Part shown: one piece after another, positions 23,707 through 62,247 of the stretch
Layout of the letters: every line of letters begins with the position of its first letter
Position numbering within the stretch: position 1 is the first letter of the stretch
NCBI GenBank assembly: GCA_904063045.1
Contig: CAJFCJ010000002.1
Coordinates: 2,847,891-2,911,890, forward strand
Direction: 5' to 3'
DNA length: 64,000 nt
Source: Dimorphilus gyrociliatus
Taxonomy: Eukaryota; Animalia; Annelida
The notes under the pieces: generated by a model
Told to the model about the DNA's origin: nothing
What the model saw: only the letters and a program-made list of their open reading frames with translations
Databases searched by the model: none
Position numbers and translations under genes: made by a program

Positions 23707-26700
23707 ATGTCTAAAAGTTTTGGAGATGACCTCTTTGAGGTATTTGATGAGGAACCAACGTCCGTTCTAAAGAACGATAATAGCACGTATGTAATATTTA
23801 AAAAACCACATGTTTTTACCTTTTGTAAAAGTCGTTGATCGGCTCCTCATTAAAATTTTTATAGGTCCACGATCAAACGGAAATCTTCTCAGTCTGATAA
23901 CGGTGAAAATGATGAACAAGAACCAAAAAAGCCCAAATCCATTTTTGATAAAATTAATGAAGTTAAAGATGAATACGTGACTATTGCGGAGGACGCTCCA
24001 AAGGAGTATGTGAATTAGTAATTATACATCTAAACAATAAATCAATTTTCTCATCTCAGGTCGACGGAAGAGGTGAAGCAGAGCTTTAGAGTTGACCAAA
24101 TTTATCAAACGGAGGATTGTACCCACGAAGTAGTTTTACCTGGCGAAGCCGAATTAGATTCTCTGAAAGCTGGAGAAAAACCGGCTAAGGAATACAAGTT
24201 TAATTTAGACACTTTTCAAAAGCAAGCTACAATGTGTCTGGAAAATTCTCAATCAGTCTTAGTGTCAGCTCACACTTCAGCAGGAAAAACAGTTGTAGCT
24301 GAATACGCAATAGCAATGTCTTTTCGCAATAAGCAGAAGGTTATTTATACAACACCTATCAAGGCTCTCTCGAATCAGAAGTTCCGGGAATTTCAAGAAG
24401 AATTTCAAGATGTTGGCCTTATGACTGGAGATACAACAATTAATCCTAATGCATCTTGTTTGATTATGACAACAGAAATTTTGCGTAGTATGTTATACAG
24501 AGGATCGGAATTAACGAGAGAAGTGGCCTGGGTTATTTTTGATGAAATTCATTATATGAGAGATAAGATGCGAGGAGTTGTTTGGGAAGAAACAATTATT
24601 CTACTCCCTGATAATGTACGATATGTCTTCCTCTCTGCCACTATTCCAAATGCTCGCCAATTCGCAGAATGGATAGTCTTTCTGCATAAGCAACCCGTTC
24701 ATGTTGTATATACAGAAAAACGTCCTGTACCCCTTCAGCATTATGTGTATCCATCAGGTGGAGATGGAGTTCATCTTGTGCTCAATGAAAAAGGACAATT
24801 TAAAGAGGACAATTTGTCAGTTGCAATGGACACTTTAGCGAAAGCAGGAGAAGCGGGAATGGGTGATCAAAGGGGAAGGAGGGGTGGAAACAGAGGACAG
24901 AATGAGAGCAACGTGCTGAAAGTCGTCCGAATGATAACTGAAAAGAGTTTCACTCCAGTAATTATTTTTTCATTTTCAAGAAAAGAATGCGAAGAGCATG
25001 CTGTTCAATTATCAAAGTTGGACTTGAACTCTGATACAGAAAAAGAGCACGTTGAAAAAGTTTTTAAAAATGCGATGATGTATTTAAGTGACGAAGATAG
25101 AAAATTACCCCAAGTTGACAATGTGCTACCTTTACTAAAAAAGGGCATTGGTAAGTTTGATAAGTTAAATATAATAATCAAATACGAATGAATTGTGTTT
25201 CTAAACAGGAATACATCATTCTGGTTTGTTACCTTTATTGAAAGAGACGATTGAAATTCTCTTTGGTGAAGGCTTAATCAAAGCTTTATTTGCCACGGAA
25301 ACTTTTGCTATGGGATTAAATATGCCTGCAAAAACTGTTGTCTTTACACAAACAGAAAAGTTTGATGGTGTTGATGTTCGCCCATTAACATCAGGAGAGT
25401 ATATACAGATGAGTGGACGAGCTGGTCGAAGAGGATTAGATGAAAAAGGTATAGTCATCATGATGATGAAACAGAGAGTTACACCAGCCGAAGTGAAAAA
25501 TATGCTTGGGGGAGCTGCTGATCCTCTGAATTCAGCTTTTCATCTCACATACAATATGGTTTTAAATCTAATGAGAGTAGAAGAAGTAAATCCAGAATAT
25601 ATGTTAGAAAGGTCATTTTATCAATTTCAAAACTATAGCTCTTTACCTGCTCTAGAAAGACAATTAAAAGATCTAGAAATGAAGTATGTTTCATTTAAAA
25701 TTCCAAGAGAAAGTGAAATAGAAAGCTATCATAAGTTGAGAAGACAATTAAAACACCGCGAAAAAGAATTACTGTCCTACACTCAAAAAGCTAAATATAT
25801 AGTTCCTTGGTTAAAAGTTGGTCGTTTAATCGAAGTGAAACATGATGATACATATTTTGGTTGGGGAGCAGTTGTCAATGTCTATCAGAAAACATTAAAG
25901 GAAGATGTAACGGAAAGACGTTACTTTGTTGATGTTATGTTAGATTTAGATCCTTCTTGTTTGAGAAATTTTAAACAAGGAGGTAATCCAAAACCTTCTG
26001 ACGGAAAAAATGGTGAAATGTGTGTTATTCCAATTACGTTAAAAACAATACAAGCCGTTAGCCAGATTCGTATTCTACTTCCTGATGATCTGAAATCTAA
26101 AGATAAGAGACAACGCGTAAAAAAAGATATAGATGAAGTTAGACGACGTCAAAAAGATGGTATACCTCTCCTCGATCCCCAGGAAGACTTTGGCATTAAA
26201 GAGGAAGGCTTTAAAGAAGTGCTGAAAAAGATAGAAGCTCTTGAGAAACGGTTGTACTCTCATGTCTTAACAAATGATTCTCAATTAGAAGATTTGTACA
26301 ACTTATTTGAATCCAAAATGTCCATTGGTGATGAAGTAAGAAAAATTAAAAGTCAGTTAAAAGCAAAGAAAAGTCTACTGCAGATGGAAGAATTAAAATG
26401 CCGTAAAAGAGTTCTCCGACGATTAGGCTATGCCACGGCACAAGATGTAATTGAGATCAAAGGAAGAGTTGCTTGTGAGATTGACTCTGTTGATGAATTA
26501 TTGGTTACTGAACTTCTTTTTGAAAATATGTTTGATGATCTCTCTCCATCAGAAGTTGCAGCCGTTATGAGTTGTTTTGTATTTGACGAGAAGTGCTCAG
26601 AAATGCCTAAGCTAACAGATACTTTATCAGGTTAAAAGTTTTAGAAAGATACTTTTTGTTTAATATTAACTAGTCTTTTTATAGGGACACTCAGGAAAAT

Positions 26701-27090
26701 CCAAGAAGCAGCAAGAAAGATAGCTAAAGTTTGCATTGATGCGAAAATCGAGTTAGATGAAGAGGAATATGTTGAGAGATTGAAACCATACTTAATGGAT
26801 ATTGTTTATGCTTGGTGCGAGGGAGCTCAGTTTTCAAAGATATGCGAAATGACAGATATTTTTGAGGGTAAGTGATAAAATGCAATTCAAATTTCAAACT
26901 TCTGCGAATTCTTACTTTAATTATATTGACAGGGTCAATCGTTCGATCTATGCGTCGACTCGCAGAAGTTATGCGTCAGTTAGTTTGTGCGGCAAAAGCA
27001 ATTGGCAACACGAATCTTGAAAATAAATTTTCAGAATCTATTCGTTTGTTGAAGAGAGATATTGTCTTTGCTGCTAGCCTATATTTGTAA
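23707..27090 (+). CDS. MTREX: Exosome RNA helicase MTR4 (SKIV2L2/MTREX); 6 exons
   Basis: [13 protein letters not shown], Walker [14 protein letters not shown] box, [36 protein letters not shown]/arch region, C-terminal [13 protein letters not shown]-like end ([13 protein letters not shown]). Confidence 0.97.
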
Positions 27091-27127
27091 ATTTTTGTTT
27101 CACATGAAAAATTTGTTAAAATGAAGA

Positions 27128-30100
27128 TTATGAGTCACTATCACTCATATTTTCAACATTTTCATTGGTGTCAACAAAGATATCCAATAAAGTTTTTATT
27201 TGGCTATCCTCGTCCATGTCCATGTTTATGAAAAAGTCTCGAAACGCTTCATTTCTGCAAATTTACATAATTGTTAATAAGATTAATCTGTTTATAACTA
27301 AACATATATATATATATATATATATAGTATACAAACCGTGATATGCAATCCTCTTCCGTTTCTAAACATTTGTAATAAAGTTCTAAGCTACTATTTTTCT
27401 TTATGCTATTCAATATTTCTGCTGTCCTCTGTATCACATCATCTGAAGATCCAGTCTGTTGAGCTACATCGGAGGCATGTGAATTTAACTCTATTCCAGG
27501 TTTGATCTGAAATAAGCTAATGAACTCCTCCTCGTTAACCAGAATTTCCGTTTTCTGAGTTGATAAAGTACTAAGTTAGAGTATGCTTGCAAAAAAAGAC
27601 AATCACACAAACCCATTTGCGAATCTTTGAAGAGTTAGGTAGAACACGAAAAAGATCATGTAAATGGGTAACAACTAGCACATGAGGAGGATTTTCTTGT
27701 TGGACAAAATTATGAATACAAGCCCCAAGAATTGCCGTCCCTTTAAGAAAAATTGATCAAAATTTCATGAAATTTTTATATTTGAAACTTAAAATCTATT
27801 CATACCATCGGCGTTGAGTGTTCCTTTGCCAAATTCATCAATCACTATCAAAGATTTCTCAGTTGCAAAATTGAGCGCAACTGTCATTTGGTTAATATCG
27901 ATAAAGAACGTTGACAGATGAACTGAGACACTTTCCATTGTTCTTATTCTTGTGAAAATTCGATCTGTTAAGGATATTGTTGCGCACTTAGCAGGAACAA
28001 AGCTTCCTAAATGAGCCAGAAAAATGATAAGAGCCGTCTGCTTTATAAAAACACTTTTCCCGCTTGCATTTGGGCCAGTAATTATGTGGATATTTCCATA
28101 ATCAACACCTGAGTTAAAGTTGTTTGATATAAAAGAATCCACGATAAGCTCTTGAAGTGGATGCCGTCCTTCCTCAATGCAATACTTCCCATCGTTTTTC
28201 ATTGTAGGCCTTACATAGTTATGTTCTCTAGCAACTACTCCAAAACTGAAGAAAGTCATTCAGAACTTCAGTAATTTTCTCCAAAAATGTAAAATACTCG
28301 TTTATTTCATAAATATAGATATTTTCGGATTACAAATTAAGACTATATTTTGTTACAAAATCGAATTTAAAATTTTATGGTACACGTTCTGAGTGACTTT
28401 CCTTATGAGGCAATCAAGTTCAGCAGCAAATTCGCATATTTTCAAAAGTGTAGTGGAATTATTTGTTATAAGAGTTTGTAGTTCGTGCATTAGTTTTGTT
28501 TCCATATCGCTAATCTCAAACTTTGGATCTCCGAGTAAGTCATCCAATCCTAATATACATCCGCACTATTATAAACTTAAATTTATTTAGTAAACTAACA
28601 AACCACATGCGTCGCGATTCTTATAAAATGCTTGATCTGTTGACGTATACTGAGGAAGTAATTTGTATATAATATATACATTGATTTCATAATATAGAAA
28701 AGTAAAACAAACCAAAAATTTCATATCTGGAATATCACTTATTTCATCATCTTTAGTTTCAACTTCTTCTCTGTTCACTGCATACATGAATCCCATCTAA
28801 AAATTATTACACTTGCAATAGTATATGTTATATATAAAACTTCGTCTGATAAATATAAATTTGTTGACGTTGTTACACTTACATGAGGTATATAAACCAT
28901 TTTACCACTGGGATACTTTCTACCGGTTTCTTCATATGCTCTGTCAGTAAATTTCTCGAGAGTTTGCCCAATTTCTTCATATTTTTTCTTCTCTACAATC
29001 GTGAATATTTTAAGTATGAATAAAATTTATACATTTTAATTAGCTTACTTTCATCGAGTGTATCATTTACACCCGGTTTTACGACAAAGGCCTGCTCTAT
29101 CCGTGATTGTTCAAAGTCGATCTGCGAGTTACAAAAGTTATGTGTAATTTTTAGCCCTTCAGCCTATTACTTACAGTTGAGGAGATAATATTATGCAACA
29201 TGGTCAAATCATCATCAAAATTTTCTAGTATCTATTAAAAAAATGAATAATATACTCAAAAACCATTTATCAGAGATCCATACTTTGTGAAAAATTGATA
29301 CATTTTCAGGACAAGAGCTTCTAATTATATTGGCTATTGAAATCGAATTGAACAAAGTCTGAAAAAAATATACATTAGCATGTTGTCTAGAAATTCTCTC
29401 TAGATGCTTGTATCTGTTCTCAAATAATGAAATGATTCACCTGGACAAGACTTTGCCAACCATAAAAATCAAACCCACCCAACTTCATTCGATGTAAAAT
29501 AGGCTAAAAGACATAATTTTAAAAAAGAAATTAGATATGTTCAATCTAACCGTTAAATTTTTCATGTTTTTTAGGCAACGTTGTAAGCTATCAACAATAT
29601 CAGCACGAGTAGACACTGAAAAGAATTCAACAGCGTCTAAACGCTCCTTTATCTGACTCATATTACGAAGCGGCTTCTGAAACCATTGGTGTAGTAGTCT
29701 AGATCCTGGTAATGAGCTACATCTATTCATATGACGCAATAGACTTAGTCCTTCCTTTGTCGCATTCCAAAAACTTGACTTGAGAACCGACGGGTGAACA
29801 TCTCTCTTGAAAATTTGCAGAGCTCCATAGGAACTCTCATCCAGAGTCATGACATTTTCTCTATAAGCAAAAAAAAGTGATTAAAAGTCAAGGCTGCTTT
29901 TAGATTATTACATATCGAAAATTTTATATCCAGTAATAATAAGCGAGTCTTGAGAAGTCTTTAAGTTGTTAATATTCATTGCCTGTAAATATTTAATCAA
30001 GCCCCCAATCGCACAAATTACATTTGTACTGTCGTATGGTACAACCGAGGTGAGATAAAGCTTCTTTTCTGCATCAGTTAAGTAGGTTGGCATGGTTAAC

Positions 30101-31388
30101 AGTGGAATGTTTTCGATTCTTGATTTTGCAATATCATAATCTTTTTTGGAAAATAGAATAATATAATTCATATCCAATGTGATATAGAAAACTCACTGTA
30201 ATCTCTCGATGACTGAATTTCCACGCTGAAACTGCCTAAATCGGTGGCAACTGAAGATAAACAGATAGCTTCTTCATCTGTAGAAAAATGTGAACTTTTT
30301 CAATGATTATAGAATATTAACTTCAAATGAACCATAATCGCCATTGCGTCCACTATTAGGGTCAATAATTTTCAGAAGGTTGTTATCACATCTGGAACTG
30401 ACCACAATGGCTTGAGGTTGAATCGCTTGTATAACTGAAAAATATTAATATATAGCAGATACCATGCTTCATATAAAAAATAAATTATTAATCTGATACA
30501 GCTTTATTACAAACTGATTGAATATTGAACCTTTCTGAAATTCCAAGTATTCTCCACTGTCAATAAAATCCAACATCATGAATATTATGCCTGAGTCAAT
30601 CTCAAAGAAAGAAATTCCTAGTTTGTCCCTTGTTTGATGAACACTAACGACTATATTACTATCTTCTTTTATATTTTTGGATAGCTGGAAATTTTCTAAT
30701 GTGGTCTCGGACGAATTCGATTTATCAACCGGTAGTGATTCACTTTTATCAGTCAATTGAGCTGACGGTGTTGAATTGAAAACTTTTCCAAAAGATCTTG
30801 TAACTGTTTGATTCTCCAGTTGGGTATCGTTGCTTACATTACTCGATCGATCACAAGACAGTAATGCATTCTTTGAAGGAAAGCTAGGGTCTGATGCTAT
30901 ATTTGGAAAATTTGAAACTGAGCTATCTCGAGAATCAGACACTTTTCCCCCATAAAAATCATCAAGGCTCCTAAAAGCCTCTTTATGTTGGCGGGAAGTG
31001 TTCTGTATATTATCGTCGTTTTCAAATTCGGCATCTGCATTCACTCTAAATGAAAGAAAAGTTGAAAATTTTTCAGAAAAAAAAATGTTGTTTACCCTTC
31101 ATCCGACAATAGGTCTACATCAAAATCTTCTTCTTCTGGAATTTCTTCAAATTCTTCACCTGATGCTTCACTAAATCCTCCAAATTCTAATTCAAGCGAT
31201 GCTTCATCACAAATACTCTCATTGCTTTCTTCACTAAAAAAGTGTGTTGGATATTATATATTTCAAAAATATGAACTTGTTTTTATAGAATAAACTCTAC
31301 TCTACCGTCTAGTGGGACGTTCTGCCCCAGTGGATGAAGAACTAGGACTTGTAAAACGATTTTTAAATGTTTTCTTCGGAAAATTCAT
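27128..31388 (-). CDS. MSH5: MutS homolog 5 (meiotic MutS-gamma subunit); about 17 exons with an acidic N-terminal extension
   Basis: KEGLSLL..MNRCSSLPGSRLL, LDDLLGD, GRHPLQEL, ITGPNASGKSVFIKQ (Walker A), DRIFTRI, LSTFFID, SLIVIDEFGKGT; stop TAA at 27128-27130. One intron (28246-28401) appears non-canonical. Confidence 0.93.
28246..28401 (-). other. MSH5 intron with putative GA donor and a 16-bp terminal inverted repeat (Introner/MITE-like)
   Basis: Minus strand: ...CTC ATA AG|gaaagtcactcagaac...gttctgaatgactttcttcag|T TTT GGA. Arms at plus-strand 28386-28401 and 28251-28266 match 15/16. Confidence 0.6.
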
Positions 31389-31928
31389 TGTTTAAAAAAT
31401 GTCACATTTCACCATGCTAAGAGGAAGTACTGTATTCCACTAAATAAAGCAGCCGAAAAAGAACGTTCGAAAAAAGTAAACTAAAAAATGATACGTTTTT
31501 CGCAATTAAAGGTTTTATTTAAAAAAACCTTTGAACTATTTTATTTATTTGAGTTTTTTATTTTAAACAAATATGTTTGATAATAAAAAAAAAACAAGCC
31601 TAAAAGAAGAAAATTTATAAAGTTGATAAATTTACCGGCAACAGGGAGCATAAATTATACTGTATTAATCAAATTCATACTTATATTCATTATTGCCTAT
31701 TTTAATATTATATCTATTATATTATGTAAAACTAATAGACTTTTATAAACAATTTAATTATTTTGTGGTAAGAAAATAAAAAAAAATAAGTTTTTTCTTA
31801 TTTTACGAGAAAATAAATATTTGAATATGCATATGGGAATTCCCCTGGACTTTTATATAAAATATTCTGAGTATAAGAGGCTCCATCACTTCGATAAACT
31901 AATTTTGTGGATAAGTGTCGATAAGGAG

Positions 31929-38632: not shown

Positions 38633-42105
<3,473 letters not shown>

Positions 42106-62065: not shown

Positions 62066-62118
62066 TTTAGAAAAAGTACTGCAGTTGGATTTTATTGACC
62101 TGCAGTACTTTTTCTAAA
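62066..62118. repeat. Perfect 19-bp inverted repeat with 15-nt spacer
   Basis: TTTAGAAAAAGTACTGCAG (62066-62084) and CTGCAGTACTTTTTCTAAA (62100-62118). Confidence 0.95.
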
Positions 62119-62247
62119 TCCAACCAAAAATGTACTTTTTTATTGTTAGAGATAAATCTTTAAATTTATGCAAATTTGTGCATTTGATAAAGAATAGATG
62201 CTAACAATTCAGTCTTATCAAGCTTTGCACTCTAACGTATTGTGAAA

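What the first reader, a model, noticed from the sequence alone, without database searches (positions are those of the whole stretch)
28246..28401. MSH5 intron with a non-canonical GA donor and terminal inverted repeats: candidate transposon-generated (Introner-like) intron
Seen: the upstream exon encodes AAELDCLI and the downstream exon starts cag|T TTT GGA (FGVVAREHNYVRP), so a phase-2 donor is needed. The join that keeps the MutS alignment gap-free (LDCLI-S-FGVVA, compare human LDVLLALASAA) is AG|GAAAGT, the consensus AG|GTAAGT with only +2 changed. The first 16 nt of the intron (GAAAGTCACTCAGAAC) are the reverse complement, 15/16, of the 16 nt ending 5 nt before the acceptor (GTTCTGAATGACTTTC). 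The repeat extends to 17/20 with only transition mismatches. The intron is 156 nt against about 50-70 nt for most introns here, and it was the only non-GT donor I found while tracing the gene models. The alternative canonical donor, GT|gtacca at 28383, would insert RKVTQN into a conserved helix. Established: GA-AG introns exist (human FGFR genes, Oikopleura, copepods, dinoflagellates), and Introner elements are TIR-bearing non-autonomous DNA transposons that create introns, sometimes with non-canonical sites. Inference: either an Introner-type insertion (the flanks ATAAG and TTCAG could be a drifted target-site duplication) or a stem that brings the splice sites together or regulates splicing of a meiotic gene.
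Basis: partly seen in the sequence, partly recalled or inferred. Interest (0 to 1): 0.8.

Follow-up and report, generated by a model that had tools for sequence, protein, structure and literature searches.

The report
Helix-ended GA-AG intron in MSH5
This is a real intron of the meiotic repair gene MSH5 that starts with GA instead of GT, and a related worm species keeps both the GA and the pairing of the intron's two ends while the paired letters differ, so the pairing probably helps splicing and is not a transposon scar.

Summary
Confirmed: transcript-type contigs from three runs in two studies join 28402 to 28245, removing exactly 156 nt whose ends are GA..AG. The 14 other joints listed for MSH5 and the neighbouring gene are all GT..AG. 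The 16-nt terminal inverted repeat (15/16) is real and is the only one of its kind in the 64-kb window. No shuffle reproduces it.

There is no Introner family. The intron and its arms are single-copy in the 77.9-Mb genome.

New here: a related species (exon DNA 72-86% identical, introns at shuffled-level identity) has the orthologous intron. It also starts AG|GAAAGT and its ends also pair, but with different arm letters. Two other GA-AG introns of this genome, flagged earlier by this scan on other DNA (a P450 and a cofilin), show the same pattern in both species.

No U1 gene carries a compensating 5' end. In a butterfly and in one unidentified eukaryote the MSH5 intron lies 9 nt upstream, so the dinophilid position is derived.

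Best reading: a constitutive U2-type GA-AG intron whose terminal helix is kept by selection and probably assists splicing. A transposon origin is neither shown nor excluded. The class claim rests on three loci. The genome appears to be Dimorphilus gyrociliatus (inferred).

The parts
27337..31045 (-). MSH5 (MutS homologue 5) gene, as far as the transcript contigs cover it
   Evidence: Spliced contigs of X2, X3 and X4. Exon 27806-28245 matches the MutS ATPase domain. The nearest named relatives are MSH5.
28402..28549 (-). Upstream exon, ending ...AAELDCLI plus AG (phase 2)
   Evidence: Joints 28548>28603 (cut +1) and 28245>28402; translation.
28246..28401 (-). The 156-nt GA-AG intron (26% G+C)
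   Evidence: Skipped in contigs of three runs from two studies. The DNA contig of X1 is identical. Single copy in the genome.
28400..28401 (-). GA donor dinucleotide within AG|GAAAGT
   Evidence: The orthologous donor in the relative is also AG|GAAAGT.
28386..28401 (-). 5' arm of the terminal helix (intron positions +1 to +16)
28251..28266 (-). 3' arm of the terminal helix (intron positions -21 to -6)
28246..28250 (-). Unpaired tail TTCAG carrying the AG acceptor
   Evidence: The relative has CTCAG in the same register.
28267..28273 (-). Candidate branch site TACTGAA just upstream of the 3' arm (inferred only)
   Evidence: Resemblance to UACUAAC at -28 to -22. No branch-point data.
28382..28385 (-). 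GTGT: two cryptic GT donors (+17, +19) that no contig uses
27806..28245 (-). Downstream exon, starting T TTT GGA (FGVVAREHNYVRP... Walker A)

Best explanation
The segment is a genuine, constitutively removed U2-type intron of MSH5 with a GA-AG boundary. The rest of its donor (AG|GAAAGT) matches the U1/U6 consensus, and it has a pyrimidine-rich AG acceptor. Its two ends form a helix (+1..+16 with -21..-6) that leaves only YTCAG free. Selection appears to maintain this helix: the related species has the same GA donor at the same site, and its ends also pair, but with different arm letters. Inferred mechanism: once U1/U6 occupy +1..+6, the inner part of the helix stays formed. It loops out the interior of an intron that is unusually long for this genome and ties the 3' splice site close to the 5' splice site. 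This would help the splicing step that suffers when +2 is A, namely docking of the 3' AG for exon ligation. That GA-AG splicing occurs, and that the GA donor and the pairing are both conserved, is shown. That the helix is needed for splicing is inferred. The intron belongs to no repeated element family. How it arose is open: insertion of an element with inverted-repeat ends, or a shift from the ancestral position 9 nt upstream.
For: RNA-type contigs join 28402 to 28245 in three runs from two studies; they hold about 0.57 of the gene's words, that is, exons only. The join restores the conserved LDCLxS(F/L)... spacing. The helix is a strong outlier: -22.4 kcal/mol against -2.0 to -9.3 for 14 neighbouring introns, and 0 of 4000 shuffles reach it. 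In the relative (L023:3490-3573, 84 nt) the intron reads AG|GAAAGT...CCTCAG|C. Its 9 other orthologous introns are GT-AG with -1.9 to -9.0, while this one has -14.7; 5 of 4000 shuffles reach that. Intron identity between the two species equals the shuffled level, and the arms differ. The same pattern holds at two other loci. The P450 intron is 182 nt here and 184 nt in the relative, with -21.6 and -19.5 and 0 of 4000 shuffles each; in the relative only the GA-AG reading keeps the frame. The cofilin intron is 157 and 149 nt, is GA-AG in both species, has no GT before an in-frame stop, and its arms differ beyond +6. No sequence family exists. None of the 13 U1 loci carries the 5' end ATACTTTCCTG that would pair with +2 A.
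Against: Only two species could be compared. Only the MSH5 junction has RNA support; the P450 and cofilin junctions rest on reading frames. All RNA evidence is from assembled contigs, which drop rare isoforms. A helix that includes +1..+6 should hinder U1 binding, so it could be inhibitory or regulatory instead. In the P450 intron the arm sequence is conserved, not covarying, which fits any constraint on those letters. The relative's cofilin helix is weak (-9.2; 82 of 4000 shuffles reach it).
Confidence: 0.6

Rival explanations
1. It is a relic of an old transposon with inverted-repeat ends (Introner or MITE type) that created the intron. The inverted repeat is only the transposon's ends and has no present function.
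For: Terminal inverted repeats abut the donor. The intron is not at the ancestral position: a butterfly and one unidentified eukaryote have their intron 9 nt upstream, in the Cys codon. Comparable hairpin-ended non-canonical introns in other lineages are attributed to MITEs (PMC11282704, PMC7789003). The cofilin intron is flanked by AATAG...AATAG.
Against: No second copy of the intron or of its arms as a pair exists in 77.9 Mb. The three GA introns share no arm sequence beyond GAA. The intron predates the split of two species whose introns are otherwise at shuffled-level identity, yet both keep complementary arms with different letters; neutral decay would have destroyed the pairing. The flanks ATAAG/TTCAG match at only 3 of 5 positions.
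Confidence: 0.15
2. The helix serves another purpose than helping constitutive splicing. It could be a regulatory switch that masks the 5' splice site to time MSH5 expression in the germ line, or a precursor of a small RNA (mirtron-like).
For: The helix covers the donor itself. MSH5 is a meiotic gene. The relative's 84-nt intron folds as one long imperfect hairpin.
Against: The same architecture occurs in a P450 and a cofilin gene, which have no meiotic link. The arm sequences are not conserved between species, unlike mature miRNAs. The 156-nt intron folds as a multi-branch structure, not a pre-miRNA. No Rfam family matches. Spliced contigs occur in all three RNA-type runs.
Confidence: 0.1
3. 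The pairing is a coincidence or a neutral by-product, and GA is simply tolerated because the rest of the donor is optimal.
For: One inverted repeat of this strength per 64 kb is only about 5 times the shuffled rate. At 14/≤1 mismatch the sampled 264 kb has 17 repeats against about 15 expected. GA donors with otherwise perfect consensus work without known helices in human FGFR genes (own knowledge; cited in PMC7072748).
Against: The arms sit exactly at +1 and -6 of the only GA intron among the 15 joints listed (5 more were not shown). The coincidence recurs in the orthologue and at two more GA introns in both species.
Confidence: 0.08
4. It is an artefact: base 28400 is an assembly error, or the true junction uses the GT at 28383 or 28385.
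For: The assembly is from long reads, and X1 may be its own source.
Against: The short-read-type contig of X1 is identical over 27337-31500. An independent assembly of another species has A at the same +2. All three transcript contigs use the 28402>28245 joint. The GT alternative inserts six residues into a motif with fixed spacing.
Confidence: 0.02

Closest known systems
[quoted passage not shown]
   Same: GA at +1/+2 with an AG acceptor. The exon ends in AG and +3 is A, and the rest of the donor matches consensus, as described for E. affinis and O. dioica.
   Different: PMC7072748 describes no terminal helix for those introns. Here the helix is conserved across species. GA-AG looks rare here (1 of the 15 joints listed), not 3% of introns.
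Introner elements and MITE-derived non-canonical introns (Micromonas, Aureococcus, Amoebophrya, Fritillaria borealis; PMC11282704, PMC7789003)
   Same: 8-20-nt inverted repeats pair the 5' and 3' ends of the intron. Short direct repeats may occur at the borders. Splice sites are non-canonical.
   Different: Those occur as families of many similar copies with family-specific ends and at species-specific positions. This intron is single-copy, shares no arm sequence with the other GA introns, and is shared by two diverged species.
Euglenid nonconventional introns (PMC11282704, PMC12501133)
   Same: The ends pair to bring the intron borders together, and the 3' partner also ends at about -6.
   Different: Euglenid introns lack a polypyrimidine tract and an AG rule, are excised as circles, and are probably not spliceosomal. 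This one has a U1-like donor, a pyrimidine tract and an AG.
Yeast introns with 'zipper' stems between the 5' splice site region and the branch region, such as RP51B (own knowledge)
   Same: Intramolecular pairing shortens the effective distance within a long intron and improves splicing. This is the working model proposed here.
   Different: Those are canonical GT introns. Their stem lies between the donor region and the branch point, not at the extreme ends.
Mirtrons (own knowledge)
   Same: The intron ends pair to form the base of a hairpin.
   Different: There is no conserved mature arm. The 156-nt intron is multi-branched with a 5-nt 3' tail. No small-RNA evidence exists.

Membership tests
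U2-type GA-AG intron | The transcript junction removes a segment that begins GA and ends AG | tested here: met
   Joint 28245>28402 in X2, X3 and X4; the ends are GA..AG on the gene strand. A two-letter ambiguity allows GG..CA or AG..TC.
U2-type GA-AG intron | Apart from +2, the donor matches the U1/U6 consensus, and there is a pyrimidine tract plus AG at the 3' end | tested here: met
   AG|GAAAGT and CTTTCTTCAG. The same holds in the relative.
U2-type GA-AG intron | The A at +2 is in the DNA, not an assembly error | tested here: met
   The X1 contig is identical (possibly the source sample). The orthologue in another species also has GA.
U2-type GA-AG intron | Lariat formation at a branch adenosine | not testable with these tools
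   Only a candidate TACTGAA at -28..-22.
U12-type (minor) intron | Donor /RTATCCTT and branch site TCCTTAAC | tested here: not met
   The donor is GAAAGTCA and no TCCTTAAC occurs.
Introner / MITE-derived intron | Many copies of similar sequence in the same genome | tested here: not met
   Only a self hit at E<=10. Arm hits are near control level and unpaired. Arm-pair patterns are at control level.
Introner / MITE-derived intron | Terminal inverted repeats | tested here: met
   15/16 over 16 nt.
Introner / MITE-derived intron | Target-site duplication flanking the element | tested here: inconclusive
   ATAAG against TTCAG matches at 3 of 5 positions. The cofilin intron has AATAG...AATAG, but with 9 extra nt.
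Introner / MITE-derived intron | Lineage-specific position | tested here: inconclusive
   The intron is shared with the relative. It lies 9 nt from the position found in Pararge aegeria and in L054. No other annelid could be examined.
Mirtron | The whole intron is a pre-miRNA-like hairpin with a conserved arm | tested here: not met
   Multi-branch fold. The arms are not conserved. No Rfam match.
MSH5 orthologue (host gene) | MutS ATPase domain with closest named relatives MSH5 | tested here: met
   MutS and MSH3 structures at 1e-29 to 1e-30. Named hits are MSH5 or mutS homolog 5. The relative's locus keeps the same neighbouring genes and carries PF00488.

The most novel reading that the evidence does not exclude
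Dinophilid annelids carry a small class of 'helix-clamped' GA-AG introns. In these, an intramolecular helix between the two intron ends is part of the splicing signal. The helix is kept by compensatory evolution. It makes up for the contact lost when +2 is A by tethering the 3' splice site to the 5' splice site. This would be a structural splicing code in an animal whose splicing machinery is otherwise canonical.
Probability: 0.4. Interest if true: 0.8.

Novelty: new variant of a known kind. Interest (0 to 1): 0.66.

Why it matters
GA at a 5' splice site normally blocks splicing, and it is not known why some animals tolerate it. Here the same unusual donor comes with a terminal helix at three unrelated genes. 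Both features survive in a second species although the intron sequences have otherwise diverged to shuffled-level identity. That gives a testable link between RNA structure and use of a defective splice site, in an animal with a compact, well-assembled genome and canonical U1 genes. It also separates 'hairpin-ended non-canonical intron' from 'transposon family', two things that usually occur together in protists and tunicates.

Tried and rejected
- **Introner or MITE family:** whole-genome search with the 156 nt, the 16-nt arm with up to 2 mismatches, a partner check at 20 loci, the strict architecture pattern and 9-bp arm pairs at four spacing ranges. All were at control level.
- **Compensating U1 variant (ATACTTTCCTG):** 57 genomic hits, none at any of the 13 U1 loci. 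The one ATACTTTCCTGGC hit (C27) is not U1-like downstream.
- **Known RNA family in or around the intron:** none.
- **Phage collection search with the intron:** only chance AT-rich hits; this search was uninformative.
- **General excess of short-range inverted repeats:** none in 264 kb (17 found against about 15 expected). The relaxed window scan was mostly noise. One candidate (40637-40897) lies inside coding sequence.
- **Stwintron or two-step splicing that would rebuild a GT:** rejected from the sequence, because +2..+3 is AA.
- **Full-length MSH5 proteins P0004, P0006 and P0008:** these lie on intron-less contigs (transcripts, or intron-less genes) and say nothing about intron position. Pomacea MSH5 is not on record.
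- **L026 (62% relative):** this looks like a spliced contig, so the absence of the intron there is uninformative.
- **Upstream exon alone against solved structures:** no hit.

Full report
**What is there.** The gene on the minus strand between about 27337 and 31045 is a MutS homologue. Its exon 27806-28245 matches the MutS ATPase domain of solved MutS and MSH3 structures at 1e-29 to 1e-30. Its nearest named relatives are MSH5. At 28401..28246 the strand reads ...CTC ATA AG|GAAAGTCACTCAGAAC...GTTCTGAATGACTTTC TTCAG|T TTT GGA. The first 16 intron bases are complementary, 15 of 16, to the 16 bases that end 5 nt before the acceptor.

**Is the junction real?** Six public runs came back for the gene. 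X1 holds 0.99 of its words (genomic DNA, possibly the assembly's own sample). X2 (another study and label, 2017), X3 and X4 hold about 0.57, the share expected for exons only. Laid on 25600-31500, the contigs of X2, X3 and X4 are spliced at every intron. All three skip exactly 28246-28401, with ends GA..AG on the gene strand. Two letters fit both sides, so the cut could formally lie 1 or 2 nt away (GG..CA or AG..TC), but only GA..AG gives an AG acceptor. The other 12 listed MSH5 introns and 2 introns of the neighbouring helicase gene are GT-AG, 47-86 nt long. The X1 DNA contig is identical to the window over 27337-31500. The join spells the serine of LDCLI-S-FGVVA. Every homologue inspected has LDC-x-x-(S/A)-x-x-x-x-A-(R/K)-x-x-N-(Y/F)-x-(R/C)-P with the same spacing. 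The GT donors at 28385 and 28383 would insert RKVTQN. Contigs drop rare isoforms, so minor use of those donors is not excluded.

**Is the inverted repeat more than chance?**
- It is the only repeat of at least 15/16 (16-mer, gap 30-400 nt, not low-complexity) in the 64-kb window. Shuffled windows give 0.2, so its mere presence means little.
- Its placement is the signal: one arm starts at +1 and the other ends at -6 of the only GA intron in view.
- With the arm anchored at the intron start, 0 of 200,000 shuffles reach 15/16.
- The terminal duplex energy (pairing between the first 24 and last 30 nt) is -22.4 kcal/mol, against -2.0 to -9.3 for 14 neighbouring introns. 0 of 4000 shuffles reach it.

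**Is it an Introner?** No family exists.
- The 156 nt match only themselves in the 77.9-Mb genome at E<=10.
- The 16-nt arm with up to 2 mismatches has 47 hits against 28 controls, and none of the 20 loci inspected has an inverted partner.
- The strict architecture AGGAARGT...ACYTTCYTYAG finds only this intron.
- 9-bp arm pairs at spacings of 20-262 nt are at control level.
- The proposed duplication ATAAG/TTCAG matches at 3 of 5 positions.

**A related species.** The exon peptide found a 156-aa open frame that is 86% identical (P0001). It lies on Logan contigs with the same neighbouring genes, MTR4 and FancD2 (L023-L025). Exon DNA is 72-86% identical. The ten orthologous introns have identities at or near the shuffled level. 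The orthologous intron (L023:3490-3573, 84 nt) reads CTT ATT AG|GAAAGTTGTTAAAAGC...TTTGCTTTGAACAAC CTCAG|C TTT GGA. So it has the same GA donor, the same phase in the same serine codon, and a 3' arm that again ends at -6. The arms themselves differ: GTTGTTAAAAGCAAA pairs with TTTGCTTTGAACAAC. Its terminal duplex is -14.7 kcal/mol, against -1.9 to -9.0 for the nine other introns, all GT-AG; 5 of 4000 shuffles reach it. A GA donor and terminal pairing that persist while the letters change point to selection on structure. This also rules out an assembly error at +2.

**Is it one of a kind?** Earlier first-stage notes of this scan, on other DNA of the same genome, list further GA-AG introns, several with paired ends. 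I checked two of them.
- **P450 intron** (L022, minus strand). It lies between EVLR and LKTPVPFALPHY, is 182 nt long, and reads AAG|GAAGGTTTTTGC...GCAAAAACCTTC CTTAAAG|. In this genome a GT-AG alternative would differ by one residue. In the relative (L057, 184 nt) only GA-AG keeps the frame. The duplex energies are -21.6 and -19.5 kcal/mol, with 0 of 4000 shuffles each. Here the 5' 26 nt are nearly identical between the species.
- **Cofilin intron** (L050, minus strand, 157 nt). It reads AATAG|GAAATTTTC... and has no GT before an in-frame stop. The relative (L060, 149 nt) reads AATAG|GAAATTATTAATT...AATTAACAATTTC.... Both pair at their ends, with different letters beyond +6. The duplex energies are -12.6 and -9.2 kcal/mol; 13 and 82 of 4000 shuffles reach them.

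All three GA introns are longer (84-184 nt) than the 47-86 nt of their neighbours, and they share no arm sequence beyond GAA. In the 264 kb sampled there is no general excess of short-range inverted repeats.

**How is GA recognised?** The genome has 13 U1 matches. Ten loci carry the canonical ATACTTACCTGGC. None of the 57 genomic ATACTTTCCTG sites lies in a U1 locus, and the one ATACTTTCCTGGC site is not U1-like downstream. So no U1 variant compensates for +2 A. The donor relies on its otherwise full consensus match, as reported for GA donors in E. affinis and O. dioica (PMC7072748).

**Age and position.** In the butterfly Pararge aegeria the MSH5 intron lies at GAC TG|GTGAGT...CACAG|C CTA ATA AGC, phase 2 in the Cys codon. 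An unidentified eukaryote (L054) has it in the same place. The dinophilid intron is phase 2 in the Ser codon, exactly 9 nt downstream. It is therefore either a shifted ancestral intron or a new one acquired after loss. Roughly 16% of coding positions lie within 9 nt of some ancestral intron (my own rough estimate), so the proximity proves little. A transposon origin is neither shown nor excluded.

**Mechanism (inferred).** U1 and then U6 must bind -3..+6, so the outer six pairs have to open. The inner pairs (+7..+16 with -21..-12; +7..+19 in the relative) can stay formed. They would loop out the interior of an intron that is long for a splicing system tuned to about 66-nt introns (PMC7854359). 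They would also hold the 3' AG within about 11 nt of the 5' splice site. Established knowledge says that +2 U contacts the penultimate A of the intron during exon ligation, and that GA donors tend to stall before that step. Tethering would offset this defect. A candidate branch site, TACTGAA, lies just upstream of the 3' arm. None of this was tested.

**Identity of the genome.** 77,897,245 bases in 349 contigs match the roughly 78-Mb, roughly 350-scaffold assembly of Dimorphilus gyrociliatus. So do the short introns and the availability of a 2016-17 transcriptome plus 2020 stage RNA-seq (PMC7854359). This is an inference; run and organism names are coded.

**Verdict.** The Introner reading fails its family test. 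The helix reading is supported by cross-species conservation at three loci. This is a new variant of known kinds: GA-AG introns and hairpin-ended non-canonical introns.

Noticed in passing
window 41300-41441 (minus strand): A 142-nt segment reads GAAAAGTCAC...GCGACTTTTC TTTAG and sits directly before AAT ATG GAT GAA... of the poly(A)-polymerase-like gene. Its ends pair 9/10 and resemble the MSH5 intron ends (GAAA(A)GTCAC and GACTTT(T)CTTYAG). It could be a GA-AG helix-ended 5'-UTR intron, but the upstream flank ends in TTG, not AG.
   Followed up: partly
window 62068-62116: A perfect 17-bp hairpin (TAGAAAAAGTACTGCAG / CTGCAGTACTTTTTCTA, 15-nt loop) lies about 130 nt upstream of the ATG of a transporter-like open frame at 62242. 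Its function is unknown.
   Followed up: no
L059:14538-15442 and L054:2439-2490: The MSH5 intron of Pararge aegeria and of an unidentified eukaryote lies in the Cys codon of ELDC (phase 2). That is 9 nt upstream of the dinophilid intron and in the same phase.
   Followed up: yes
G000 C65:4551-4712, C133:19672-19833, C133:34023-34184, C72:27410-27578, C3:2401789-2401954: Five of the 13 U1 matches (82-120 bits) do not carry ATACTNNCCTGGC at their start, so their 5' ends differ from the canonical one.
   Followed up: partly
L026 (Logan SRR23434832): The MSH5 contig of a more distant relative (62% identity) looks spliced but changes frame twice, as if exons were skipped. It may be an aberrant or alternative transcript.
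   Followed up: no
G000 C46:87134, C81:32914, C97:64456, C103:69643: The 16-mer GAAAGACTCTCAGAAC occurs identically on four small contigs. This is probably a repeat family unrelated to the intron.
   Followed up: no
window 27292-27336: read laying skipped this stretch, between the 3' ends of MSH5 and the MTR4-like helicase gene, as a repeat. Contigs of all runs break there.
   Followed up: no
L050 (minus strand) 1385-1541 and L060:1288-1436: In both species the cofilin GA intron has CTATT right after the 3' arm. In this genome it also has an AATAG...AATAG direct repeat at its borders. This looks like a target-site duplication, but 9 extra nt intervene.
   Followed up: partly
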